A stretch of 64,000 nt of DNA from Octopus sinensis (GCF_006345805.1 NC_043003.1:55428001-55492000); one strand, 5' to 3'; positions 1,635-60,197 are shown, numbered from the stretch's first letter. Made by a program: numbers and translations. Notes: a model not told the origin generated them from the sequence alone.

Positions 1635-1734
1635 NNNNNNNNNNNNNNNNNNNNNNNNNNNNNNNNNNNNNNNNNNNNNNNNNNNNNNNNNNNNNNNNNN
1701 NNNNNNNNNNNNNNNNNNNNNNNNNNNNNNNNNN
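1635..1734. other. Assembly gap (100 N)
   Basis: Run of exactly 100 N; flanks are unrelated (hAT relic left, SINE right). Confidence 0.98.
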
Positions 1735-1860
1735 CTTTCAGTTTACGTCTACCAAATACACTTAAAAGTCTTTGGTCGAGGCTAGAGCGGAAGACACCTT
1801 CCCAAGGTGCCGCGAAGTAGGACTGAACTCGAAACCATGTGGTTGGGAAGCAAGCTTCTT
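1735..1860 (-). mobile_element. CORE-type tRNA-derived SINE, 5' head fragment
   Basis: Minus strand AAGAAGCTTGCTTCCCAACCACATGGTTTCGAGTTCAGTCC...GCACCTTGGGAAGG matches the family heads at 5609 and 32311. Confidence 0.85.
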
Positions 1861-2079
1861 TATTTTATCAAATTAACCATAAAGGCTTTACATAGATGGA
1901 ATCAAATTCTGGATGGACAATAACACAAATGAAATAAATAATGAGTAAAATAGTGATACTGATGAGGGAAGGAGACTACGCTTCATCAATTTGTTTCTCT
2001 TTTATAAAAACAAATTCAGATTATATTTGAACACTATATATATTTGAACAAATTCAGATTATACACCTCTTACTATAGT

Positions 2080-3165
2080 TCAATGAGACACAAGGTCCTT
2101 ACAAATGAGGCCTCTTACTTTTATCCCCCGCCGGCGCCCAGACAGGTCCAATGCTTCATTCAAATACGCTGATTCCGCCATGTCGGGATGCTTCAGCCGG
2201 GAGTGGAATGCGTTTTCGCGGAAGGAGTTCATTACCATGAGCAAATCTGTCTCCGACATGACCTTAGCAGCCACTTGTGGAGGTCATGCAAAGTTCTCAA
2301 TACAGGCTAGAACCCTCCCCTCCGACCCTCTAGGGTAAAGACTTTCATAAATTCTTTAATTGCCCCTCCATTGTTGAAGAAGATTACAAATTCCTGCTTC
2401 ACCCAGTTTTGCTTCTTTTTTTCTTTTGCCATGTGAGGGTGGAATTCTTCCGTTTTGCCCGGAAGATTTTCCTCCTCCAGCCTTAGGATCCCTCGGTGGG
2501 CAACCATTGCCACCCAACTACTTCCCATTTCGGCCCTTTTTCGCTGAGGAGGACTACACCTCCTCGACCATCTCCTTCTCTCCATCCGATCTAGGATTGG
2601 AGGGGGCCTTCCTCAACTAACACCTCTAGGACCCTACTCTGATCCTGGGGACAGTTCTTTTTTATATGGCCTGGGTCTAGGCGGAGGTGACACTTGTAGG
2701 TGGGGGAGACGCGGCCCTCAAGTATCACTGGATACCCGTTACCAGCCATAGTCAGAAAATCCTGGAAGACCAGATTCTTAGCTTTGACCCAACCCCATCA
2801 GCCACCGGCAACATTTTTACATTAAGCATCTTGGATCCGCTGCCACCCAGACCCCAGCGGATAGTATATTCTATCCACTCGGGTTAGATTACAGGTGGCA
2901 ACCCGCAGACCCAAACTCTTGTCAACTTCTTCCCACAATATGTAAGAAGAAGCAGGATCTCCTGGCCTTCCAAGGGTTGGCTCGTAAATTTGCGAGACTC
3001 CTCAGAAGTGTCAAATAGCAACCTCACCGTTACATACTTGGTACCCTTGGAAATAATTTTATATTTGTCAGATTATCAGCCAACGTCTTCTCAATCCCTA
3101 TGTTTTTGAAGACGGCGATGGTGTCGAGCGACTTTGAATAAGTCCTCAACACCACCGTCTCTCTC
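2080..3165 (-). pseudogene. Tx1/L1-clade LINE ORF1 relic (no ORF2)
   Basis: Frameshifted minus translation RTVVLRTY...KGTKYVTVRLLF...TYCGKKLTRVWVCGLPP...PEW...PVILEGRVSPTYKCHLRLDPGHIKKNCP is colinear with ORF1 of the 54.8-60.2 kb LINE (KTIIFKTY...YYMGMRTSRIKITRVPP...VFVEGRKPRCFLCGQLGHIRRNC). Zinc knuckle has Cys2 replaced by Arg (CGC). Confidence 0.75.
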
Positions 3166-3994
3166 TTATTTCACCTCACTCTCTCTCTCTGTATATACAT
3201 GCATAATATCTACTAAGATATCTATCTTGCGTGGACTCATCTTGAAATATTTACATAATACTGCCTATATGAAAAAAGAAGACTAAGGTACATTTTATTC
3301 CTCTCTATGAATTATGAGTATTGCAGCAAACATCTTAACTGGGTAAGATATATTGGTTCAAGACAAATACATCTCAGCTGAAACTCGCCCACTAAAGAGT
3401 TTGGTGTAAAAGATATACTGTCCTCATAATATATTTTATCACCTACATAAATGAATATGTAAATATGGCCTTCAATATACATAGAATTGAGTACATGTCG
3501 GTTCCTTCATTATTTCGAATGTTTTTCTCCGGTTATCTTAAACTTGAAATGATCCATGTCTACTTTTGTTTTCATTGTGGAGATTGTTGCTTTGCCTCCA
3601 GATCAACATTTACTGGGTACACATATTGCCTATAAATAACCAAAAATCAATAGCTTCTTATTTAATATTTTAGTATTTCATTTTAGGTGATCTCATATGG
3701 ATATTTATATTTAAATTTTAGGATGGCGGGTTGTGATTTGAAGAAAATTTGTTATTAGTAAGTGGAGAGACCACTTACAGAGAATAATGCTCTCTGGACT
3801 GTGTGTTGATATAATTGTTGATCGTAAGCATGTAAGAAATGACTATCTCGTTTTATTTGGTCAGAGAAAGAATTGCCCTGCTTTGAGTTTTCGCATCGTA
3901 ATGGAGTGATGGAGACGCTGTCACGAGATGCACTTTTTCAAACATCGCCAAAACTACCTCTCTCCATATCTGATTTATATGATTTCTACCCGTG

Positions 3995-4083
3995 AGAAGA
4001 AGAAGAAGAAGAAGAAGAAGAAGAAGAAGAAGAAGAAGAAGAAGAAGAAGAAGAAGAAGAAGCTGAAGAAGAAGAAGAAGAAG
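3995..4083 (+). repeat. (GAA)n microsatellite
   Basis: Near-perfect GAA run with one interruption. Confidence 0.97.
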
Positions 4084-5448
4084 TCTTCTTTATATATCTA
4101 CTCCAAAAAGGATAAAAGGTAGAGTTGGCCTAAGCAAGATTTGAACGCAGTAGGTAGAGGGTTAAAGCAAGTAATATAAAGCATTCTGCCTGCTTGCCTA
4201 ATGACTGTCAATTAGCTGTCTATGAAAGCGGGAACACATTGTGTGCCATGTATCCTTCCATTTTATTTTAAAACTGTAGGGTGTCAAGTAAAGGAGATAG
4301 ATTATTTATGTGTGGAATCATTCAAATTACGTAGAAATTGGTTTAGAAATGCGGTGAAATATTTGCACGCCTGTTATTGCAGACTTGGGATTTGTCCATT
4401 TGTCCATTTCATGATTAATTTCATCAATGATTCAATATTAGATGTTAACTGTTAGAAATCCATTCTAATATACTCATTTACAGCCAGGATATTGCTACTA
4501 AAGTGACGAGATATTTATTAATTTTCCTTTCCATCATATTATATAATGGAACAGAAAAAGTTTCTAATTGAATTTTGAAAATTATTGTTGTTGTTTCTGC
4601 TCCAGTTGTTGCTTGTTGTCGTTGTTTTGTTTAGTCACAGGTCAGCCCTGATGAAGCAGGCCTAAGTCGAAACGATTTCTAACCTTGAAGGTACCTCATT
4701 TTTAGAAGAATTTAAGGCTACATTTATTTAGCGTTGCTTCCTACATATTTAAGAGTGAAAGTGCAGCAATTTGAGACGCATGCATTTATCTGTTAATTTT
4801 AAGAAGTTGTGCACCGTTTAAGGGCTTAAATGTGAAATAGATATTGAAGTGCAATATTGAGAAACAATTGAATTTTACATCACAGGCCGGTCAATATTTA
4901 AGTGCGCCGATGCTCAACACAGACTGGGCGACAATATCTGGGTTTTCAATGCATCAAACTTTCCATCTCGGCATTGTTGGTGGGGTCAGAAAGAATGCAC
5001 AACACTACGTTTGTTATTTATATGCTTGCAGGATTTATTGGAAGATTGTTGGGTAGGACACTGGATTACTTTGAGGGGTAACTTGAGGATTTACTATAAG
5101 GTTAACAGATTGCGTTCTTGTTAAATGGTGGTGAGGTTATTTAAGAACCTATAACTCTGGACATATGCAATAAGGTTCTTTATCATACCTGAAATAGTGA
5201 CTGAAGTCGCAATTCACTAATTACATAACTTTCAGGACAATATTGTACTTGTCACATTATACTGTATGTTGATATCAGGTAGGTTCGCCGTGGTCCAGAC
5301 TTAATTCATAGAGCATGCAAAAGATCAAAGACATTTAAATAAAGATAATGTGTTTTGCTTTTTCTGCAAATTTAATATTCTGAGTTTTAAAGGAAAAATG
5401 GGTGCTATGTGTAAAAGTTCATTTGAATATTAGCATGAATATTTCGCT

Positions 5449-23658: not shown

Positions 23659-23879
23659 AAGGCGAGCTGGCAGAAACGTTAGCACGCCGGGCGAAATACG
23701 TAGCCGTATTTCGTCTGTCGTTACGTTGTGAGTTCAAATTCTGCCGAGGTAGACTTTGCCTTTCATCCTTTCGGGGTCGATAAATAAAGTACCAGTTACG
23801 CACTCGGGTCGATGTAATCGACTTAATCCGTTTGTCTGTCCCCTTCTATGTTTAACCTCTTCTGTGCAATAAAGAAATA
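23659..23879 (+). mobile_element. Nin/Deu-type SINE, full length, LINE-like tail
   Basis: GGCGAGCTGGCAGAAACG (A-box-like), GAGTTCAAATTC (B-box-like), CCTTTCATCCTTTCGGGGTCGATAAA core, tail ..GCAATAAAGAAATA. Confidence 0.92.
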
Positions 23880-34255: not shown

Positions 34256-34322
34256 ATTAACTAGCTTGCAGAGCAGTTCGGTTTGTTGTTGCTGGTGATG
34301 GTGGCGACGATATGATTAAGAC

Positions 34323-34555
34323 GGTGACCTGGCAGAAACGTTAACACGCCGGTCCAAATGCCTAGCGGTATTTCATCTGCCGTTACGTTGTGAGTTCAAA
34401 TTCCGTCGAGGTCGACTTTGCCTTTCATCCTTTCGGGGTCGATAAATTAAGTACCAGTTACGCACTGGAGTCGATGTAATCGACTTAATACCTATGTCTG
34501 TCCTTGTTTGTCCTCTCTGTGTTTAGCCCCTTGTGAGTAATAAAGAAATAGGTAT
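34323..34555 (+). mobile_element. Nin/Deu-type SINE, LINE-like tail followed by GGTAT
   Basis: Full head and core; tail TGTTTAGCCCCTTGTGAGTAATAAAGAAATA ends at 34550, then GGTAT. Confidence 0.92.
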
Positions 34556-36299: not shown

Positions 36300-36965
36300 G
36301 AGAGTTGTGTCAGAGAGTTGTTTCTTGCTGATGTTAATGAAGGAGCTGGGAATGTGGCGACGATGATGGCCGGGGTGGATGTTGCTGACGGGACTACCAG
36401 TAGTTTGTTATGGTGATGGTGACTGTATTATCGCTGATAGTTACCCAAGCTGGGGTTGATAAGTCGATGATGGTAAACGTAGCGGTTAGTGGAACTAGTT
36501 GAAACGATAGCAAATGGAGTTGATGCTGATGTGGCGAGTGGAGAAGTGGTATGATGGATGGTGGAATTGATATTTAATTTGGTGATGATGATGGAAATTG
36601 AAGCTGATAAAAGATAGAGGTAAGATTGTGTTGAGTAATAATGAATGAATCTGTTGATAGGAACGGTTGTATTGGTACTGGTGGTTGTAGTTGGTAGATA
36701 AAATGGTGTTGATGGTTGTGTATTAAGATAAAAGCAACTATAGAGTTGAAAGTGTTCTTCTTGATGATGGTAATGGTGGTTGGTCATGATGAAGCTGGCA
36801 ACAAAAATACGCATCATCATCATCATCACCATCGTCAAAAACATCATCATCGTCACTCTCGGCGGCGATGGAGGTGCTATCATCATCATCATCATCATCA
36901 TCATCTCTATCACCATCACCATTATCGTCGTCGTCATCATCATCATCCTCACTACCAGCAGCAGC

Positions 36966-36996
<31 letters not shown>

Positions 36997-37578
36997 CCAC
37001 CAACCCCTCACCACAACCATCCTCATCAGCATCGCCATCGTCGTCGTCGCTATCTTCATACACTACATCATCATTGTCATCACCACTACCACCCACCGGA
37101 AGAAAATTCTAAGGTTATTCTGTTGCAATTGTTCTTATTGATGATGATGATGAGAATGATGACGACGACGAGAACGACTACGATGATGATGATGATGGTG
37201 ATTAGAATCATGATGATGGTGATGACGACGATGTTGTTGTAGCCTCGGTTGTTGTGGAGGTGACTGCGGTGGTGAGGTATTGGTTTTGACGATGGATGTT
37301 GTGGTGATGATTGCAATCCGCCATGATAATAATAGTGGTGATAGCGGTTATTTTCATGGAAGATGATGAAGATGATGAAGATGATGATGATGATGATGAT
37401 AATGATGACGACGATGAAAATGATGATGATGATGACGATGTCGATGATGACATTGAAGATAGTGATGATGATGATGATGATGATGACGATGTCGATGACG
37501 ATGATGATTATGATTATGATGATGATGATGATGATGTCGAGGACTACGATGAAGATAATGATGATGAAAATGATGAAA

Positions 37579-37609
<31 letters not shown>

Positions 37610-38034
37610 CGACGACGACGACGATGATAATAATGACGATGATCGTGGTGTTACCTGTTTGAAGTGATGGCATTCATGGTGGTAGTCGTGGTAAATGCAG
37701 CGTCCTCGGTGGCGGCAACGGCAGCGCAAGTGAGGGGATGATTGTGGTGGGGCGATGGTTGTTCCTTGCATGGCAGCAATTGTATCACTGCTATGAACGA
37801 ATGGAGAAGACATCTGATGTTGCTAAGCACTTTGCAAAAGTCAAAACGTTGTTTAAAGCTTTCTAAGTAAAATAAATATCGTTTGTTATTTGTTTGCATT
37901 GGTTTTTATGCAGCTATTTTCTTGTTGCTCTTTTTGAAGTAGCGTTTCTAATTCCTTTCTAATATTATTATTATTATTATTATTATTGTTATTGTTGTTG
38001 TTGTTGTTTTTATTATTATTATTATTATCGTTGC

Positions 38035-41062: not shown

Positions 41063-41111
41063 TATACATATTTATATATTCACACCACATATATGTATGT
41101 GTGCATATGCT

Positions 41112-41145
<34 letters not shown>

Positions 41146-41428
41146 TGAAATGTGGATTAGATTCCTCTTCGGTTTTCGAATTTGTGCTTTGTGCTTTATA
41201 TTTCATATTAAAGAAAATAATTTTTGATATATATGTTTGTAAATGGGCGCCTTACATGACCATGTATGTAATAATTCTGTTTCAGATAAACTTGGCTCCC
41301 TTCGACCCACTGCGTAACGCTTCGCGTAAGCAACATACTCTTATCACAACATCTGATTTCCGAATGTATTTTGAAGAAATTTTACTTGAGGTGTATATGT
41401 TATTCCATCGTTCACACTCGCACGCACG

Positions 41429-41623
<195 letters not shown>

Positions 41624-41959
41624 ACACACTCATATGCTCACAGACAGACATAAGCTCTGAAACATTCGCTCACTTAATTACAGTCTCTTCCAAACAGGAT
41701 TTTAATGTGACAGTGGAAATATTGGTTTCTAATCTTGTCAAAACCAACAATTTCGTAGGAGGGGTCATATCGATTATATCGCCCTCACTGAACCACGCTC
41801 TCTTCCTTTATCGACCCAGAGAAGATGAAAAGTAAAGACAACCATAGCTTCATTTGAACTCCGAATGTAAAAACGAACGAAATAGCGCAAAGCTTTTTCT
41901 CTGGTGAGCTGACGTTTCTGCCAGCTCATCACCTTCAGGGTATTATTATTATTGCCATG

Positions 41960-46285: not shown

Positions 46286-47519
46286 GACAGACATATCTTG
46301 TCAAGAGCAAAATGCATTCGCAATTTATCAGCTACACAGTAGATTCGGGTTCGACCCAAATGTGAAACATTTTTGGCATGAATGAACTTCTACTTTAGTC
46401 TTGATTCGAGCAATATATTCTGAATGAAATTGGGCAGACAAAAACAGAGATGTCGAAGAAACATGTTTGTCAAGTTGAAGTTTGTCTATGACAAACTCAA
46501 TGTTTCGTGCAATTTTACGCCAAATCCTAAACTCTGGACACATTTTGGAGGTTCTTTTCTGTTGCAAGAATTCTGGTTTGAAATTAGTCCCCCCCCCTGG
46601 CCATTCACAGAAGAGTCATTGACTGCTGTCGTTTATCCATGTGTTAAAACTTCACAAAAATGAATAAAGAAATAACGATATAAATAAAAATAGAATTTTT
46701 TTTAAAGGGAAATCTGTTGAGGCTTGTTCTTTCCTTATCTTCCCACTGAGCTCTGGTTGAGTGAGGAAAATAAAATCCCTTGCAATTCCGTAATATTCCC
46801 TGCACAGCTATATATATATTAAAAGCCGTGAAAGTAAAAATCCGTTTATAAAAAGGAGTTGAGAATCCTTTTGCTTGGTCCAGGTTTATTCTTCATTGAA
46901 AAGAACGCAGTCTGCACATGCACTGTATATGACCAGCCTTATTAACTTTAAAATACGACTTTTCCAGATGTACTGTATCTTGTTTCATACAAATCACTCC
47001 CCGTCTTAGCATGTCACGGAACCTTTAATACTATCAGCAACCTCCTTGTTTTTCTTTCTTTCATCGGAACACATTGGCTGGTGGCCCTATAGAAATTCCC
47101 CTCACTGCCAACAAAGTAGTTGCCTTTAGAAGATTCAAATCAGAAGATTCGTGATGCATATCTTGTTGAACTATGACATTCAAAATGGAACTGTCCCAGC
47201 CATCACCAATCATTATGAACCAAAACTGATCATGCTTTGTGCAAAATACAGATAATTGAACTAAAGAGTTTCAAGAACAATAGGTACCTTTGAAGCTGAT
47301 ATCTAGCACTTTCTTTATGATTAGAATGAATTTTATCTTTAAGCAAAGTTTTGTCCCCATCGACAACTATGCAGAAGTGATCAACATGTGAGGAGAGTGT
47401 GTAACTCGCTGATTTTGTTATATATTTGTTGCAAAAAACGTGTTAACTTCCCTTGAAAGGGCTGCAATAAAAGACGGTGTGTTTCATAGTGAAACAATAA
47501 TAATGATAATTCCATTTAC

Positions 47520-47722
47520 TAAAGGTACGAGGCCCGAAATTTCTAAAGAGGGGACTAGTCAAGTACATCGACCATAGTGTTTCACTGGTACTTAATTTAT
47601 CGACACCGAAAGGATGAAAGGCAAAATCCTACTCGGTGGAATTTCGACTCAGAACGTAGAGACGGACGAAACACTGCGAAGCGTTTCTCCCGGCTAGATA
47701 ACGGTACTGCCTTCTCGCTGCC

Positions 47723-47724
<2 letters not shown>
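47520..47724 (-). mobile_element. Nin/Deu-type SINE, older tail, next to (TAA)n at 47723-47786
   Basis: CTGGTACTTAATTTATCGACACCGAAAGGATGAAAGGC..CTCAGAACGTAGAGACGGACGAAA. Confidence 0.85.
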
Positions 47725-47770
<46 letters not shown>

Positions 47771-52380: not shown

Positions 52381-52818
52381 CTTTGCAAAGGTAACTATTT
52401 CGCTCCTCTAATAACAGCATAATTCCTGCCAACACTAAACCGAGATCAAATTCACAGACAGTCCTACCGTAACCACCACCACAATCAGCACGGATCAAAT
52501 CAACCACACGAACAAGACAAATAATACTAACACAAGGGAAGGATCTTCTATGTGGCCACTTGACCTGTCAGAAATATTGACCAAATACTCTCAAAGTATG
52601 CTTCACTGTTTTGGGGACAAAATGCGTTGGGTACTGTGTTTTGAGGTTCCGGGAACATAGGAATTTTCGGTAGGGTCACGACTGGGTCAACTGTGAACAT
52701 AAGGGTACTAGTCTAAGTATAACTTGGAGCTGAACAGCGAAAAGGACGACTGGAATAATAATTCTTGCTAGGTTTATTTACGCTACATTGCCTCCTATGT
52801 TAATATCACCCCGAGGTT

Positions 52819-53530
52819 AGGCGGCAAGCTGGCGGAATCGTTAGCACCCGGGAGAAATGCTTAAAGGTATTTCGTCTGCTGTTACGTTCTGAGTTCAAAT
52901 TCCGCCGATGTCGACTTTGCCTTTCATGCTTTTGGGGTCGATAAATTAAGTTCCAGTTACACACTGGGGTAGATGTAATTTACTTAATCCGTTTGTCTGT
53001 CCTTGTTTATCCTCTCCGTGTTTAGCCCCTTGTGGGTAGTAAAGAAATAGATATTTCGACTGTCTTTATGTTCTGAGTTCAAATTCCGCCGAAGCCGTCT
53101 TTGATGTGTGGGCGTTAAGGCGGCGAGCTCTCAGAAATGTCAGCAGGGCGGGCGAAATTCTTAAGGGTATTTCGTCTGCTGTTACGTTCTGAGTTCAAAT
53201 TCCGCTGAGGTCGACTTTGCCTTTCATACTCTGGGGATCGATAAGTTAAGTAACAGTTACACACTGGGGTCGATGTAATCGACTTAATCCGTTTGTCTGT
53301 ACTTGTTTGTCCCCTCTGGGTGTAGCTCCTAGTGAGCAGTAAAGAAATAAGAACCGTTAGCATGCCGGGCGAAATGCTGAGCACTATTTAGTCTGTCTTT
53401 ATGTTCTGAGTTCAGATTCCGCCGAGATCGGCTTTGCCTTCATCCTTTCGGGGTCGATGAATTAAGTACCAATTTCATACTGGGGTAGATCTAATCAACT
53501 GGCCCCCTCCCCCAAAATTTCGGGTCTCGT
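52819..53530 (+). mobile_element. Nested/tandem cluster of Nin/Deu-type SINEs
   Basis: LINE-tail copy 52819-53049 followed by GATATTTCGACTGTC...; LINE-tail copy 53118-53349 followed by AGAACCGTTAGC... of an older-tail copy. Confidence 0.9.
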
Positions 53531-53832
53531 GCCAAGACTCGAACAGAGTATCACCCCGAGATGACTCACATGATTCCAGTATTAGAATAATACTCCCAAC
53601 TGATATCGCCTTTAATTTGTAGAAGTGACATGAGTACCGGTAATATACTAGATGTATTATCTCAATGCCATAGAAACTGTATAAGAACTGCTTACCTTAT
53701 AACCCATTTTGATGTAAAGATACGTACATACATAGATACGCAGTTAAAATCCAACGTAGACGTGCATACTCACATACACACACACAAGCACACATATACG
53801 CACATGTATATTGCAATAGCTATGTTGAAATG

Positions 53833-54250
53833 TAGCGAGCCAACAGATTCGTTAGCGCGCCGGGCAAAATGCTTACAGGCATTTCGTCCGTATTTACGGT
53901 CTGGGTTCAGGTGCCACCAAGGTCACCTTTATCGCTCATTCTTTCGGAATTGATAAATTAAATAACAGTCAATTATTGGAGTCGGTATAATCGGGCTAGT
54001 CCCTTGCTCCCAAATTTCAGGTTGTGTGCACTTGGTAGAAAAGATTATGTAAACTGGTTTAAAGGTGGCGGGTTAGCAAGATCGTCAGCGCTCCATATTG
54101 TATGCTTAGCTGCATTTCATCCAATTTTATATCCTGAGTTCAAGTCCCACTTGTCTTTCATTCTTTCGGGATTGATGAAATAAAAGTATCAACCACGTAC
54201 CGCAGAAGATCGATATAATCGGATAGAGACCCGCCTCTAAATTTGCTGCT
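53833..54250 (+). mobile_element. Two degraded older-tail Nin/Deu-type SINEs
   Basis: Heads at ~53833 and ~54062, each with core TTCATTCTTTCGG.ATTGAT.AAAT. Confidence 0.7.
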
Positions 54251-54254
54251 TTCT

Positions 54255-54804
54255 TATTTCTTTATTGCCCACAAGGGGCTAAATATAGAGGGGACAAACA
54301 AGGACAGGCAATGGGATGAAGTCGATTACAGCGACTCCAGTGCGTAACTGGTACTTATTTTATCGACCTCGAAAAGATGAAAGGCAAAGTCAACCTCGGC
54401 GGAATTTGAACTCACAACGTAACGGCAGACGAAATATCTATTTCTTTACTACCCACAAAAGGCTAAACACAGAGAAGGCAAACAAGGACAGACAAACGGA
54501 TGAAGTCGATTATATCGACCCCAGTGCGTAGCTGGTACTTATTTAACCGACCCCGAAAGGATGAAAAGCAAAGTCGACCTCGGCGGAATTTGAACTCAGA
54601 ACGTAACGGCAGACTAAATACCTATTTCTTTATTACCCACAAGGGGCTAAACACAGAGGGACAAACAAGGACAGACATAGGTATTAAGTCGATTATATCG
54701 ACCCCAGTGCGTAACTGGTACTTAATTTATCGACCCCGAAAGGATGAAAGGCAAAGTCGACCTCGGCGGAATTTGAACTCACAACGTAACGCAGACTAAA
54801 TACC
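54255..54804 (-). mobile_element. Three tandem headless SINE units, each starting at the target motif G(G/A)TATTT(A/C)GTCTGC
   Basis: Units 54804-54623, 54622-54439 and 54438-54255 (~182-184 bp each), every one ending in A(A/G)TAAAGAAATA. Confidence 0.92.
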
Positions 54805-55059
54805 AATCTTTATTGCCCACCGGGGGCCAAACATAGATATGGACAGTACAACTGATGGGATCAGTGAATCGATATGATTTTACATAAATGTGACATCAAA
54901 AATAAAATACAATACATAAAAATCGAATGGAATACACAGTACAAAAACAATACAAATGAAGCGATGATCAAGTTACGCTCCGATCCCACAAGCCCCGATC
55001 TACCGCTGATACCTTTTTATTTTTCCTTTTTTTTTTTTTTTTTTTTTTTCCTCGTCTAT

Positions 55060-58000
55060 TCACACGGTTCCTTGCACGCACAACACTCGTGCAACATACT
55101 TCCATCTCTTTTGGAACGTACACTCTGACAGACACCTCTTCTCCAGCCACAGTTTCCTTTTCAAATGAAAAGAAAAAAAGGATCGTAAATTGTCACCAGA
55201 GATAAAGTTGCCTGTCTTAATTCCTTTTATCCTAGTATTCCATACAGCCTCTTTTGCTATTGCTACAACCGTGAGAAAACAATTCTTACCTTCGTTCGTT
55301 AGAACTCCCGGTGGGTCAATTTTTATAATTGACTCAGTCGACAGCCGTACTCTTCCTTCGCCGGACAACAGATGTTCAGCATAAGCCCACATTTCAGTTA
55401 TCTCCGAACACTGAACAATAGCGTGAGGGACAGTTTCCCTGTCCCCACCGCATCTTGGACAGGTCGGCGACTGATGTTTACCATGTCTTGCGAGCTTATC
55501 CCAAACGGGCAAGGCACCTCTGTAGCATTGCCAGGTTAAGGACTTTTGGAAGTTGTCCAACGTTCTCAACCCGAATGTACGATGAAACAAGCTGTCCAGT
55601 TGAATAAATCCGAGACCTAGAGTCGACCCCAGGCCATCGTCGCATTCAGACTCTACCAACCCACTATATAAAATCCGTGTGGAACCCCCACCGCTGGCGT
55701 TGCCCGAGCGCCGGAACAGCAAGAGGGCCTTACGGCACTCTTTATGCCACTCACTCGACCTCGGTCTACGAGAACACCAGGCTTCCTGTTCGCAAAAACT
55801 CTTGAACTCAGGGAACATTTGTCTGGCCAGCGGAGACCACACCCGTTCACTATCCAGGAGAATCCAGAGGTGCCTCAAACTCAACGCATGTCTGCGCATC
55901 ATTAACCAAGGCATCCCTAAACCTCCATTTAAAGGCTTTTGACAGCAGACAGAGCGTTTCACAAGTGGCGACCTGCCCTTCCACAAAAAGCGAAAGAGCT
56001 GTCTCTCCAACCTGATCAACCACGAATCCGGACAGGGCACGACAGTCAGGCGGTAGGTAATGACCGATGCGATAAACACATTGGCCACTTCCGCCCTCCC
56101 TTTCAAGGATAGCCACCGCCAAGACCAAGTCTTGACTACTGCAGCCACCCTGCTCAATACCTCCGTCCAGTTCTTCTCTATCTGGAGGCCTGGTCCAAAC
56201 CAGACTCCCAGCAACTTAACCGGTCCCTCCGTCCAGCGCCTAACAACACTGTCTGAAGGCATCGACTTGCCAACCCAGGTGCCGAGCTGCAAGCCGACCG
56301 ACTTTTCCCGGTTAATCTTTGCTCCTGCTACCTCCTCGTAAGCCTCAATAGTCTTACCTACTTCACGTAGGCGTACCACTGTGGTTACACTGATAGTGAT
56401 ATCATCCGCGAAAGCCGTAACAAACTCCTCTAGTCCTGGTTCTCTCGGGATGTCACTCAACCTTTGCAGTAATGGCTCGAGAGCCATCACATACAAAAGT
56501 GGTGAAAGCGGACATCCTTGACGAACCGAGCGTCTGATGCAGAACGGCTTCGAAAGGAAACCGTTCACCCGAACTATCGAGTCAATGTTGTGGTACAAAG
56601 CGATAAACCACCTGAGGAAGCCAAGGCCCAGGCCAAACCGCGCAAGTACAGTCGCTAGGTATCGATGGTCAACCCTATCAAAAGCTTTAGACTGGTCCAA
56701 ATGCACCAATGCCCCACCTTTGCCAGATTTATTACCAAGCCTCTCTATGGTATATAGCGAATAAGATGGAGGGTATCCTGAATGGTTCTGCCTGGGATGG
56801 CACATGTCTGTGCCTCCCCGACTATACCATTCGCGACACGCGCCAACCTTTTTGCTAGAACCTTGGCCAAAATCTTCACTTCTGCGTTTAACAGAGTGAT
56901 GGGCCTGAAATTCTCTAGAACGTCCCCCTTGTCCGGGTCCTTTCTGACCAACGTCACTACTCCCCGGCGCACAGATCTGGGGATAAACCCATTCTGTTTC
57001 CAGTTCGCGTACACGTCAGTCAGTAGTTGCCCGAACAAGTCTGGCATACATTTATACAGCTCGTACGGAAGACCATCAAGTCCCGGTGACTTACCCGCTT
57101 TACAATCGGCCAAAGCCTCCATCACCTCCTCAAGTGTGATTGGCCCTTCGCAAGACTCCGCATCCGACCCCGAGAGGCACGGCAGCCCGGTAAGAAAGTC
57201 CTCGAGGGCTCTCCCACCACCAGGACCGCCGTCACCCCCGAACAGCTGGGCGAAGTACTCCCGAAAGACCTCACACATTTTCTCGGGTTCGTTTATCAAG
57301 ACACCATTTTGATTCGTCAAAGACCGAATAGAGGAACTATTTCCTTGCCGAGCTTCCACCACTCGGGCCCATCCAGCGGCTTTGATTCCTTCACTTCCCA
57401 TTGCACGTAACTTAGCTCTGGTAATACTTCCCATGTGGTGGGCTTCAAGATGCTGGTTTAACTCCAGTCTTTTCACCCTCGCTTGGTCTGTATTACCAGT
57501 CCTCCAGGCTTCTTCTAGTTCCTTAACTAGACCATCTCCTATTTTACGTCCCTTCTTAGCTAAACTTATGCTAAACCTAATAGACTCATATTTGATGGCT
57601 CTTTTTAGGGCGTACCACCATTTGTTATTAATGATGGTACCTGTTAATGCCCTCTGTATTAACATCTTGATCCGCTTTCTGTACTCCTCAATCGCCAAAA
57701 GGGACGTATTGAGTTTCCAGTAGCCAGATCCCTGTCTATGCAACTTATCTACCGTCAGTTTACAGGAACCATCTTGTGGTCACTGTAGCTGACTAGAAAA
57801 AACTGTGGACACTCAACTATGGACTTATCTTTTTCTCTAATTAAAATCCTATCTAGATATGTTCTGGTAGACCCGTCACTATTTGACCACGTCCACTGTG
57901 GAGTGTTCGGGTGCTCCAACCTATATGGATCTGCTAGCTGAAATTGACTTAGCAGATCCCGAAAGCCTGTGTTACATTTTCTGTTCATGTTCGAGTTTGA

Positions 58001-58459
58001 GCCAACACAATCTGTGTGTGCTGCACATATTGTATTAGAGTCTCCTAACACTACTAGTGAATGCGACGTGGCTAGGAACTTTCCTAGGCCACGAAAATAT
58101 TCAGTTTGCGGGCCAATAATGTTTGGTGCATAAATAGCGACCAGCCTGATTGTCTTGCCACAACTGAATGTCAAGTCGAGAACGACCAGCCTGCCTTCTG
58201 GGTCAAAAAACCAACTTTTTCTCGGCTACCCGGTTTCTTTTTAGTAGGACCAACACCCCACCCCCACCTCCCGCCCGACTCGGAAACAGAAACGTTTCTC
58301 GTAGCCGTTCAGGAGGGGGAGCAGATCTCTTGGCCCCTTCCGGGTTTCCGTTGCAACAATTACATCCAAATTTCTCGACCTGATGTCATTCAGAAAGCGT
58401 CCTTGCTTCCAGCTTGACAACAGGCCATGAACATTTAAACAACCAATGTGAATAGCCAT
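55060..58459 (-). pseudogene. LINE ORF2: APE endonuclease, reverse transcriptase, C-terminal CCHC (frameshifted as assembled)
   Basis: MAIHIGCLNVHGL..DVIVATET, IYAPN..LGDSN..TW..YLDR..SDH, GYWKLN, KSPGLDGLP, NFRPITLLN, LDQSKAFDRVDH, VRQGCPLSPLLY, FADD and CPRCGGDRETVPHAIVQC, spread over ORFs 58241-58462, 57755-58174, 56745-57743 and 55060-56805. Confidence 0.95.
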
Positions 58460-59990
58460 CACTTACCTGTTTAATTAGGATTGTCCGGTGGAGGGGGACC
58501 CTCCACCTTTTTTTATCCAGGGTCGGAGGTGGACGGTCTTGGGAAATAGATTTGTCAAAATCCCGTCTCACCACCGACACAGAATTATCAGGTGGAGGGG
58601 GAATCTCCACCTTTTCCTTTTCTCGCGGGATCGGAGCTGGTAATCCATGAAATATCGACTTGTTAAAATCTAATCTCAATGAAGATACAGTCTTTCTGTA
58701 CTTATTTTGTAGAATTCTATAAGTCTTATTTGAGACTTCATATATGTCGTAATTGATAAATTCCTCTGAAAGGTTATCAATTTTTTTACAGTCTTTATGA
58801 GTTGAATGTCTCTCATGAGCTCAGTATCTTTAGTGTATACGGCTATTATGCCTTTTTCTTCTTTTTCTCTTCTGGCAGTCTTTTTGGTCGTTGTTCTGTA
58901 GTAGTCGCCGCTCTCGGCTGGGTTGCTGGTTGTATTTTTCTTTTGTTTGTTGTTTTTTCTCATCTGTTTCTTCTTTATCTTCTTCCTCTTTGTCTTTTTT
59001 CTCCTCTTCCTCCTTCATTTCCTTGCAGTTCCTTCGAATGTGGCCTAATTGACCACATAAAAAAACATCGAGGTTTTCGGCCCTCAACAAACACCACGAG
59101 GTTCTCCTCCCCTACCTCAATTGTCTCAGGAATTGTTTGAATTATTTTAGGGTCCGCTTGAATGAGAAGATTAATTGTTTTACCATCCCAGCGTGGGTTT
59201 TCCGTAGCGGTAGCCTGGAGGAGAGTAATTTTTCTACCTCTTTGATTAGGACTGCCGCCAACAACCACATAGGTTCGACCTCTGGCGGGACCCTTGTAAT
59301 TTTTATTCGCGACGTCCTCATCCCCATATAATAGGGTATTAACTCCACGTCGTTCGTTTTCAACGTTTCCACTGAGTTCTTGTGTGCTATTTCTTTATTG
59401 GTGAACCTTACTTCCACCGTTCCGAATTTTTTTCCTCTTCTCAGAAATACTACGTCGCCCAATATTGGCTTTAAGTACTTTTCTATTTTCTCTTCTGACA
59501 TTCTTTCAATTTTTCTATTTTGTAGACAATATGTTTTGAAAATTATTGTTTTTTGCTTTTCTTCCTGTAATAACTTTTGCGGAGGTTCAATTTTCACACT
59601 GTTGTCATTTATTTCCATCATTTTGCTGTATTTCATAATTTCGCTTTTATTCGTCGACAGTATCTGGGTTCCACCCCCAGCAGCCAACGCAAAACTTTTT
59701 TTTCCATTTTTTGGTTCTATCTGGATGCTAGGCACATCAATTATTCTCTTCGACACAATGCCTTTGTTCTCTGGCAAAGTCGGGAACTCTTCTGGTGAAA
59801 GTTCTGACGAGCTCTCAGACACATCTCCAAAAATATCAAATATATTATCCTCTCTGCTATTCCTTCTTGTAGCGGGGGAAACCCCTATTTCCTTGTCTGT
59901 AGTTGGCTCCTCGCCGGACATGTATTTCCTCCTCTCAACAGGAGAAACAAGTATTTCTGCTCCAACGGTAGGCTCCATGCTAGACGACAT
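58440..59990 (-). pseudogene. LINE ORF1: gag-like nucleic-acid-binding protein with CCHC zinc knuckle (frameshifted as assembled)
   Basis: ATG at 59990 (MSSSMEP); ORFs 59142-60035, 58975-59268, 58830-59090 and 58676-58963; knuckle CFLCGQLGHIRRNC. 3' end uncertain. Confidence 0.85.
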
Positions 59991-60154
59991 TCTTCCCCCA
60001 AAGGGGGAATGAACAACGCGTGCTACCACAAGCACTAAGTGTTTTCAATTGAAAACTCCAACAGTTAAGTTATTCAACAGTTTAACAAGAACAACAGTTG
60101 TTAACAATATTAACACCACGAAACAGCAATTCTTACTTCACGAACACATGTGCG

Positions 60155-60197
60155 GCAGACTAAATACCGCTAAGCATTTCGTCTGCCAGCTTGCCGC
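60155..60197 (-). mobile_element. 5' part of the host SINE head
   Basis: GCGGCAAGCTGGCAGA-CGAAATGCTTAGCGGTATTTAGTCTGC, i.e. the family head with an internal ~17-bp deletion. Confidence 0.88.

What the first reader, a model, noticed from the sequence alone, without database searches (positions are those of the whole stretch)
54791..60197. Full-length Tx1-clade LINE targets a tRNA-derived SINE
Seen: the LINE splits a Nin-type SINE between its A- and B-box regions, with an exact 14-bp TSD (GGTATTTAGTCTGC, minus; 60168-60155 and 54804-54791). Both copies share the A variant where most family copies have C. Known: Tx1-clade APE elements are often sequence-specific (Tx1L into Tx1D, Keno into U2 snRNA genes, Dewa into tRNA-gene spacers). 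I do not recall a Tx1 family targeting a SINE in octopus. Inference: a SINE-specific LINE using a very abundant, dispensable target.
Basis: partly seen in the sequence, partly recalled or inferred. Interest (0 to 1): 0.9.

Follow-up and report, generated by a model that had tools for sequence, protein, structure and literature searches.

The report
Dead Tx1-like LINE nested in its partner SINE
A broken but structurally complete L1/Tx1-type jumping gene sits inside a short octopus repeat (SINE) that borrows the same 3' tail, at a spot where three other tail-bearing copies also landed. This hints at a preferred landing site, but one window cannot prove it.

Summary
A 5,350-bp non-LTR retrotransposon (60154-54805, minus strand) splits a SINE and is flanked by an exact 14-bp duplication, GGTATTTAGTCTGC. 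Joining the two flanks restores one continuous SINE.

The element has ORF1 (a weak CCHC knuckle) and ORF2 (APE endonuclease, RT, zf-RVT). Both are broken by at least two frameshifts and two in-frame stops, so it is complete in structure but dead. Its best solved relative is human L1 ORF2p. The Tx1 label is inferred from the literature and was not tested by phylogeny.

Two findings are new:
- The last 40-60 nt of the LINE match the SINE's 3' tail, and related cephalopod LINEs end in the same motif. This LINE lineage is therefore the likely driver of the SINE.
- Three further SINE tails abut the same motif in the same orientation. Two of them build the 184-bp head-less SINE array just downstream, whose units look like independent copies.

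This points to a preferred landing site, as described for crocodilian Tx1-Mar/SINEU. Strict SINE specificity is unproven:
- No other copy of this LINE family could be retrieved.
- 6 of 10 same-tail elements lie elsewhere.
- 6 related LINE ends lie outside SINEs.
- All supporting junctions lie within about 1.8 kb.

The parts
60169..60197 (-). 5' part (head) of the interrupted SINE, with a 17-nt internal deletion relative to other copies
   Evidence: aligns to SINE positions ~1-40; continuous with 54790-54623 once the LINE and one TSD copy are removed
60155..60168 (-). Upstream copy of the 14-bp target-site duplication GGTATTTAGTCTGC (site 'T' of the SINE)
   Evidence: exact match to 54804-54791
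54805..60154 (-). L1-superfamily (Tx1-like) non-LTR retrotransposon, 5,350 bp, structurally complete but coding-dead
58700..59990 (-). ORF1 remnants: ATG at 59990, 297-aa piece to 59142, then frameshifted pieces including a CCHC knuckle (FLCGQLGHIRRNC) in 58830-59090
   Evidence: (zf-CCHC 20.1 bits, just under the 20.8 cut-off)
55060..58459 (-). ORF2: APE endonuclease ~58459-57755, RT ~56927-56200, zf-RVT 55545-55387, stop at 55062-55060. Frameshifts near 57755 and 56751; two in-frame stops (or two more frameshifts) near 58243 and 58228
   Evidence: human L1 ORF2p is the best PDB match, E 2e-49
54805..55059 (-). LINE 3' UTR. It is homologous to the 3' UTRs of related cephalopod LINEs. The last ~40-60 nt (about 54805-54860) are homologous to the SINE 3' tail. 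A-run at 55014-55049
   Evidence: (the TRF array runs into the LINE to 54837)
54791..54804 (-). Downstream copy of the 14-bp TSD
54623..54790 (-). 3' part of the interrupted SINE (B-box-like segment, body, tail) = array unit 1
54439..54622 (-). Array unit 2: head-less SINE starting at GGTATTTAGTCTGCC directly after the tail of unit 1
54255..54438 (-). Array unit 3: head-less SINE starting at GATATTTCGTCTGCC directly after the tail of unit 2; its own tail is followed by non-SINE DNA
52816..53548 (+). Separate composite SINE cluster bracketed by the 12-bp direct repeat TATCACCCCGAG (52804-52815 and 53549-53560). It contains a fourth tail-to-T junction at 53049|53050, where the T belongs to a different SINE subfamily

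Best explanation
SHOWN. A structurally complete but mutationally dead L1-superfamily (Tx1-like) LINE integrated by target-primed reverse transcription. It landed in a 14-bp site (T, GGTATTT[C/A]GTCTGC) between the A-box-like and B-box-like parts of an octopus SINE, and it duplicated that site. The LINE lineage carries the same conserved 3' tail (...TATGTTT.GCCC..GTGGG.AATAAAGA..) as the SINE.

INFERRED. This lineage is the SINE's autonomous partner, through stringent-type recognition of the 3' end. T is a preferred but not exclusive landing site for RNAs carrying this tail:
1. The element-encoded APE endonuclease nicks the antisense strand at or within 2 nt of ...TTAGC|GGTATTT, and nicks the sense strand about 14 nt downstream.
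2. A LINE RNA gives a full insertion with a clean TSD.
3. A SINE RNA landing in a SINE has its cDNA annealed to the upstream T by homology. Only a 'T-body-tail' unit is then added.
4. Repeated hits build the 184-bp head-less array seen downstream of the LINE, and each hit makes another T.
For: - TSD and empty-site reconstruction.
- Domain content and L1 affinity.
- Shared tail: the TRF array extends 33 bp into the LINE. BLAST matches LINE nt 5318-5348 to a SINE tail. The alignment of the LINE 3' end with seven SINE tails and three related LINE ends is. 3' UTR homology holds across related LINEs that all end ...AATAAAGA(A)TT.
- Recurrent junction: of the 8 tails in the window, 4 abut T, all in the sense orientation.
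- None of about 69 GRTATTT sites outside SINEs is occupied. P is about 9e-4 that all four occupied sites fall in the SINE class. Three or more exact hits out of 10 insertions by position alone has P of about 3e-11.
- Array units are 86-92% identical, no closer to each other than to dispersed copies. Unit 1 carries the subfamily variant AATACCTATG, shared with the SINE at 34322, which units 2 and 3 lack. They are therefore independent copies, not a local duplication.
- The rare A variant is shared by T1, T2 and T3, as expected if T is copied as a TSD each time.
- Precedent: Tx1-Mar LINEs and SINEU share a preference for a Mariner transposon, with tandem SINE insertions sandwiching a TSD (PMC4494074). 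Only the Tx1 and R1 clades of APE LINEs contain site-specific members (PMC13295347).
Against: - Only one copy of this LINE family is available.
- All four junctions lie within about 1.8 kb of one window (53049-54805), so a local process cannot be excluded.
- 6 of 10 same-tail elements are elsewhere, with unrelated TSDs. These are the window elements at 23879, 34550, 53349 and 54255, plus L014 at 40618 and L015.
- No occupied T site was found among about 7 in 62 kb of O. bimaculoides.
- Six 3' junctions of related LINEs (L001 x2, L003, L006, L012, L016) are not in SINEs.
- Two junctions read GATATTT rather than GGTATTT, so the exact nick position is uncertain by 2 nt.
- The SINE is dispersed genome-wide (about 11.6% of O. 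vulgaris, PMC13282606), which strict self-targeting could not produce.
Confidence: 0.5

Rival explanations
1. Chance nesting. The LINE has no meaningful site preference and happened to land in a SINE in a SINE-dense genome. The neighbouring head-less array arose by another route. One such route is repeated 5' truncation of SINE cDNA at a strong RT stop in the tRNA-like head, combined with re-use of an old insertion site next to an existing tail. Another is local recombination.
For: - SINEs make up about 11.6% of an octopus genome, so roughly 1 in 10 random insertions nests in a SINE.
- Head-to-tail SINE runs with spacers of 0-13 bp occur in O. bimaculoides and Argonauta without involving T.
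- Most same-tail elements and all related LINE ends lie elsewhere.
- All the evidence for a hotspot comes from one 1.8-kb neighbourhood.
Against: - The LINE's 3' junction coincides to the base, and in orientation, with three SINE junctions.
- No solitary SINE copy starting at T without a preceding tail was seen in the window or L014.
- The shared rare A variant in T1-T3 fits TSD copying better than independent RNAs.
- The junction sits at the exact 3' end of each tail, which slippage or unequal crossing-over would not produce.
Confidence: 0.28
2. One reading: this Tx1 family is strictly SINE-specific, like Tx1L in Tx1D or Keno in U2 genes, with nearly all copies in this SINE at this base.
For: - Exact 14-bp TSD at a site re-used by other tail-bearing elements.
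- Tx1 families are often target-specific, including for other transposons.
Against: - No second copy could be examined.
- The tail-sharing SINE, presumably moved by the same machinery, is dispersed, with varied TSDs: CATATA in (TA)n, GRTATGATT, and ATAAGGCCT.
- Related LINEs end in unique DNA or in (ATT)n.
Confidence: 0.12
3. RNA-level chimeras. The tail-to-T junctions arise when the reverse transcriptase reaches the 5' end of SINE RNAs cleaved at T and jumps to the 3' end of another tail-bearing RNA. Each cluster would then be a single retrotransposition event, not repeated DNA targeting.
For: - The + strand cluster (four SINE pieces) is bracketed by a single 12-bp direct repeat, TATCACCCCGAG, as expected for one chimeric insertion.
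- Template switching by L1-type RTs is documented (cited in PMC4494074).
Against: - It cannot explain the SINE head plus T lying upstream of the LINE 5' end, that is, a true TSD.
- No TSD of 7 bp or more brackets the whole head-LINE-array composite.
- T1-T3 share a rare variant although the units belong to different subfamilies.
Confidence: 0.1

Closest known systems
Tx1-Mar LINEs and SINEU SINEs of crocodilians (Kojima 2015, PMC4494074)
   Same: - An APE-type L1/Tx1 LINE that lands preferentially in another abundant transposon.
- A dependent SINE shares the landing site.
- Tandem SINE insertions sandwich a TSD of about 16 bp.
   Different: - The target here would be the dependent SINE itself, not a DNA transposon.
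- The partnership here is shown by a shared, non-poly(A) 3' tail, whereas SINEU ends in poly(A).
- The evidence here is 4 junctions in one window, against hundreds of copies in the crocodilian work.
Classic target-specific Tx1-clade families (Tx1L in Tx1D; Keno in U2 snRNA genes; Kibi and Koshi in microsatellites)
   Same: - ORF1 plus an ORF2 with APE, RT and a C-terminal zinc motif.
- A defined TSD at a defined site in a multicopy sequence.
   Different: Strict specificity is documented for those families from many copies. Here it is untested, and the dispersed distribution of the partner SINE argues against it.
Stringent-type LINE/SINE pairs that share a 3' tail (e.g. eel UnaL2/UnaSINE1; the plant L1 lineage with a conserved 3' end, PMC3472496, PMC3747384)
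   Same: The SINE's 3' ~40-60 nt are homologous to the LINE 3' end, and the motif is conserved across related LINEs in several cephalopods.
   Different: Those pairs insert without known site preference. Mobilisation has been shown experimentally for the eel pair but not here.
L1-Tx1 families annotated in Octopus vulgaris and other molluscs (PMC13282606, PMC8967140, PMC10294476)
   Same: The same host group and the same superfamily label. Thirteen recently active L1-Tx1 families are reported in O. vulgaris.
   Different: The parts of those papers I searched by keyword mention neither target sites nor a SINE partnership. The best protein match to this element in the databases searched is only 55-65% identical.

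Membership tests
L1 superfamily non-LTR retrotransposon | ORF2 with an N-terminal APE endonuclease followed by RT | tested here: met
   Exo_endo_phos (21.2 bits, below the 24.5 cut-off, on a fragment) and RVT_1 at 8.6e-21. tblastn of homologues carrying PF03372 and PF00078 covers LINE nt 1693-5089 in three frames.
L1 superfamily non-LTR retrotransposon | Closest solved RT is L1 ORF2p, and a C-terminal Cys/His motif is present | tested here: met
   Human L1 ORF2p at E 2e-49 against R2 at E 1e-20. zf-RVT at 9e-08, with the motif CPRCGGDRETVPHAIVQC.
Tx1 clade | RT-domain phylogeny places the element inside the Tx1 clade and not in L1 proper | not testable with these tools
The only support is indirect: RT phylogeny of mollusc LINEs finds Tx1 but not L1 proper (PMC10294476), and octopus L1-like repeats are annotated L1-Tx1.
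Tx1 clade | ORF1 with CCHC zinc knuckle(s) rather than the vertebrate L1 Transposase_22 type | tested here: inconclusive
   zf-CCHC scores 20.1 bits against a 20.8 cut-off on a frameshifted piece. The 297-aa ORF1 piece hits no Pfam family and no Transposase_22.
Target-specific non-LTR retrotransposon (Kojima criterion: more than 20% of copies flanked by the same sequence) | Many independent copies of the LINE family inserted at the same site | not testable with these tools
   Only one copy is available. The best protein relatives are 55-65% identical. DNA scans for the LINE 3' UTR and the SINE found nothing.
Target-specific non-LTR retrotransposon (Kojima criterion: more than 20% of copies flanked by the same sequence) | Elements using the same machinery (same 3' tail) share the site | tested here: inconclusive
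   4 of 10 tail-bearing elements abut T in the sense orientation, but all lie within 1.8 kb of one window. None of about 7 T sites in O. bimaculoides L014 is occupied.
LINE/SINE partnership through a shared 3' tail | Sequence homology of the 3' ends, conserved in related LINEs | tested here: met
LINE/SINE partnership through a shared 3' tail | The LINE proteins mobilise the SINE RNA | not testable with these tools
   This needs a retrotransposition assay.
tRNA-derived (SINE2) / Nin-DC SINE | Head recognisable as a tRNA; internal A and B boxes | tested here: inconclusive
   ARAGORN found 0 genes. Rfam at E<=10 found 0 hits over two full heads. A B-box-like GAGTTCAAATTCC is visible by eye. The literature labels octopus SINEs tRNA-Core or tRNA-Deu.
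tRNA-derived (SINE2) / Nin-DC SINE | Central Nin-DC domain | not tested

The most novel reading that the evidence does not exclude
A Tx1-type LINE lineage and the hugely abundant octopus SINE that copies its 3' tail both home to a 14-bp site inside that same SINE. The SINE would then be both passenger and landing pad. Self-nesting with homology-assisted 5' joining would generate head-less tandem SINE arrays. This would also identify the long-unnamed autonomous partner of the octopus SINE expansion.
Probability: 0.35. Interest if true: 0.65.

Novelty: new member of a known kind. Interest (0 to 1): 0.48.

Why it matters
SINEs make up about a tenth or more of octopus genomes, and their expansion is specific to the octopus lineage. 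I found no paper naming the LINE that drives them.

A conserved 3' tail shared between this SINE and an L1/Tx1-like LINE lineage gives a concrete candidate driver that can be tested. It would also be an animal example of an L1-superfamily element with stringent, non-poly(A) 3'-end recognition.

If the landing-site preference holds genome-wide, it would extend the Tx1 habit of targeting other transposons to a SINE that targets itself. It would also explain how SINE-derived tandem arrays (proto-satellites) can arise by retrotransposition rather than by unequal crossing-over.

If it does not hold, this is an ordinary dead LINE nested in a common repeat.

Tried and rejected
- **Other copies of the LINE.** A protein search with the 581-aa C-terminal ORF gave a best hit of 61% identity. 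The last 160 aa gave only 5 hits at 56-65%. An exact scan of JGI metagenome contigs for the 3' UTR found nothing. Scans for the SINE B-box region in viral, metagenome and GTDB genome contigs found nothing.
- **More octopus DNA.** A search with a spurious antisense SINE ORF yielded one O. bimaculoides locus, L014 (76 kb, of which 14 kb is N), and one 543-bp contig. L014 has no copy of the LINE and no genuine tail-to-T junction. The apparent junction at L014 40782 is an N-gap artefact.
- **Clade naming.** Cluster-member names returned nothing. Pfam cannot separate Tx1 from L1.
- **tRNA origin.** ARAGORN and Rfam were both negative.
- **LINE ending at the A-run.** I considered that the LINE ends at the A-run after ORF2 (55014-55049) and that the last 209 bp are a separate element. 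Rejected, because related LINEs have a homologous 3' UTR through to the same tail.
- **GGTAT microhomology.** I considered 5-nt microhomology between the RNA 3' end and T as the cause of site choice. Rejected for the LINE, whose tail ends ...AAAGATT, like its relative L016 (...AAAGAATT). It stays open for the SINE.
- **A generic 7-mer preference.** Rejected, because none of about 69 GRTATTT sites outside SINEs is occupied.
- **Tandem duplication of the array.** Disfavoured by the subfamily differences between units.
- **A TSD around the whole composite.** None of 7 bp or more was found.
Full report
**1. The observation**

On the minus strand the sequence reads as follows:
- SINE head, 60197-60169
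- GGTATTTAGTCTGC, 60168-60155
- 5,350 bp of LINE, 60154-54805
- GGTATTTAGTCTGC, 54804-54791
- SINE body and tail, 54790-54623

The two 14-mers are identical. Removing the LINE and one 14-mer leaves a continuous SINE. It is 91% identical to an unlinked copy at 34322-34550 and differs mainly by a 17-nt deletion in the head.

The motif's A variant is present in both TSD copies and in the next array unit. Intact SINE heads in this window and in an O. bimaculoides locus read GGTATTTC.

**2. The LINE**

Pfam finds the following:
- RVT_1 (8.6e-21) and zf-RVT (9e-08) in the 581-aa C-terminal ORF
- the start of RVT_1 in the 332-aa ORF
- a partial Exo_endo_phos match in the 139-aa ORF
- a near-threshold CCHC knuckle in an ORF1 fragment

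Homologues that carry APE and RT map onto the element in three successive frames: LINE nt 1693-2400, 2397-3404 and 3401-5092. Translation shows two in-frame stops, or two compensating frameshifts, in the APE part. ORF1 is also split.

The copy is therefore structurally complete but dead. It runs from a 5' UTR of about 165 nt through ORF1 and ORF2 to a 255-nt 3' UTR.

The best solved relative is human L1 ORF2p at E 2e-49, far ahead of the R2 proteins. The Tx1 label could not be tested by phylogeny, because no named references were reachable. It is plausible for two reasons. RT phylogenies of mollusc LINEs recover Tx1 but not L1 proper (PMC10294476). Octopus L1-like repeats are annotated L1-Tx1, with 13 recently active families in O. 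vulgaris (PMC13282606).

**3. The LINE and the SINE share a 3' tail**

- Tandem Repeats Finder extends the downstream 184-bp SINE array 33 bp into the LINE, to 54837.
- BLAST matches LINE nt 5318-5348 to a SINE tail.
- In an alignment of the LINE 3' end with seven SINE tails...CTGTCC..TCTATGTTT.GCCCC..GTGGG.AATAAAGA is common to both.
- Related LINEs end in the same module after a homologous 3' UTR. They are 55-65% identical in protein and come from Argonauta hians (L001), a JGI metagenome contig (L003) and Logan contigs (L006, L012, L016). Their ends read ...AATAAAGAATT...AATAAAAGAAAATT and ...AATAAAGAAATC.

The tail therefore belongs to the LINE lineage, and the SINE has borrowed it. That is the signature of a stringent-type LINE/SINE partnership.

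**4. The same site is used again**

| Junction | Tail ends at | Followed by |
|---|---|---|
| LINE | 54805 | GGTATTTAG... |
| Array unit 1 tail | 54623 | GGTATTTAGTCTGCC |
| Array unit 2 tail | 54439 | GATATTTCGTCTGCC |
| + strand SINE tail | 53049 | GATATTTCGACTGTC (a different SINE subfamily) |

Of the eight tails of this type in the window, these four are followed directly by the T motif of a SINE in the same orientation.

The three array units are 86-92% identical, no closer to one another than to dispersed copies. Unit 1 carries a subfamily variant (AATACCTATG), shared with the copy at 34322, that units 2 and 3 lack. They look like independent retrocopies, not products of local duplication. 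Each junction also sits at the exact 3' end of a tail, which slippage would not give.

A generic 7-mer preference does not explain the pattern. Of 85 GRTATTT sites in the window plus L014, the four occupied ones all lie in the 16 with SINE context (P about 9e-4).

The rare A variant shared by the first three T copies is what repeated TSD copying of one site predicts.

**5. Mechanism proposed**

The LINE-encoded APE endonuclease prefers the site ...TTAGC|GGTATTT.GTCTGC|C. A LINE RNA gives a full insertion flanked by T. A SINE RNA landing in a SINE is resolved at its 5' side by annealing of the cDNA to the upstream T. Only a 'T-body-tail' unit is then added, and a further T is created. Arrays grow in this way.

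The insertion, the TSD, the shared tail and the recurrent junction are shown. The endonuclease preference and the homology-assisted 5' joining are inferred.

A close precedent exists. Crocodilian Tx1-Mar LINEs and SINEU SINEs share a preference for a Mariner transposon, and tandem SINEU-3 copies sandwich a TSD (PMC4494074).

**6. Limits**

- I could not examine a second copy of this LINE family. Protein searches top out at 61-65% identity, and DNA scans of three collections found neither the LINE nor the SINE.
- All four supporting junctions lie within about 1.8 kb.
- Six of ten same-tail elements are elsewhere, with unrelated TSDs: CATATA in a (TA)n tract, GRTATGATT, ATAAGGCCT, a SINE head at position ~10, and two with unique flanks.
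- None of about 7 T sites in 62 kb of O. bimaculoides is occupied.
- Six related LINE ends lie in unique DNA or next to (ATT)n.
- The SINE is dispersed genome-wide, so the machinery cannot be strictly SINE-specific.
- The + strand cluster is bracketed by one 12-bp direct repeat (52804-52815 and 53549-53560). It might be a single chimeric event made by template switching. That model cannot explain the true TSD around the LINE, and no TSD brackets the whole LINE-plus-array composite.
- ARAGORN and Rfam do not recognise the SINE head as a tRNA.

**7. Verdict**

This is a dead L1/Tx1-like LINE nested in its own partner SINE, at a site that looks like a local hotspot.

| Explanation | Probability |
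|---|---|
| Preferred, non-exclusive landing site | 0.5 |
| Chance nesting | 0.28 |
| RNA-level chimeras | 0.1 |

The kind of system is known. A SINE serving as the landing pad for its own driver, and the naming of a driver for the octopus SINE expansion, would be moderately interesting if a genome-wide census confirms them.

Noticed in passing
window 52804-53560 (+): A cluster of four SINE pieces from at least two families is bracketed by a single 12-bp direct repeat, TATCACCCCGAG. It is either one chimeric retrotransposition made by template switching, or nested insertions inside one founder SINE.
   Followed up: partly
window 53050 and 54438; compare the intact heads listed: The GATATTT form of the motif occurs only at tail-to-T junctions. 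More than 12 intact SINE heads all read GGTATTT. The nick may therefore lie 2 nt further in, or SINE tails may end ...AAATAG(A/G).
   Followed up: partly
window 58477-58678 (-) and 55014-55049: The LINE carries an imperfect ~98-bp tandem duplication (71% identity) between ORF1 and ORF2. It also has a 36-nt A-run right after the ORF2 stop, which is only CCAAAAAAGG in a related LINE (L012).
   Followed up: partly
window ~47500-47725 (-); L003 2018-2105: A SINE of another family sits in an (ATT)n microsatellite. A related LINE (59% aa identity, JGI metagenome contig) also ends directly against (ATT)n. This could be microsatellite targeting, as in the Tx1 families Kibi and Koshi, or a 3' terminal repeat.
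   Followed up: no
L014 65990-66640 (O. bimaculoides); L001 14830-15313 (Argonauta hians): There are head-to-tail runs of full-length SINEs with spacers of 0-13 bp. In Argonauta the second SINE has a 10-bp TSD that starts exactly at the end of the first SINE, which suggests re-use of an old nick site.
   Followed up: partly
L001, L003, L006, L012, L014, L016 and window SINE tails: A GGCC(C)TTGTG(G/C)...AATA.AGAAAT-type 3' module is shared by several octopod SINE families and by L1/Tx1-like LINEs of different cephalopods. It appears to be an old, conserved 3' recognition element.
   Followed up: partly
P0005: A 466-aa protein 53% identical to this LINE's C-terminus is deposited as a 'Herbaspirillum sp.' MAG protein on a 1.8-kb contig. 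This is almost certainly animal-host contamination of a bacterial bin.
   Followed up: no
window 1635-1734; L014 40783-40792: There are assembly gaps (runs of N). The gap in L014 creates a false tandem duplication of the SINE T region.
   Followed up: yes
window 36428-37673 (-), 41097-41660 (+): ORFs of 187-222 aa with no Pfam match. Their nature is unknown.
   Followed up: partly
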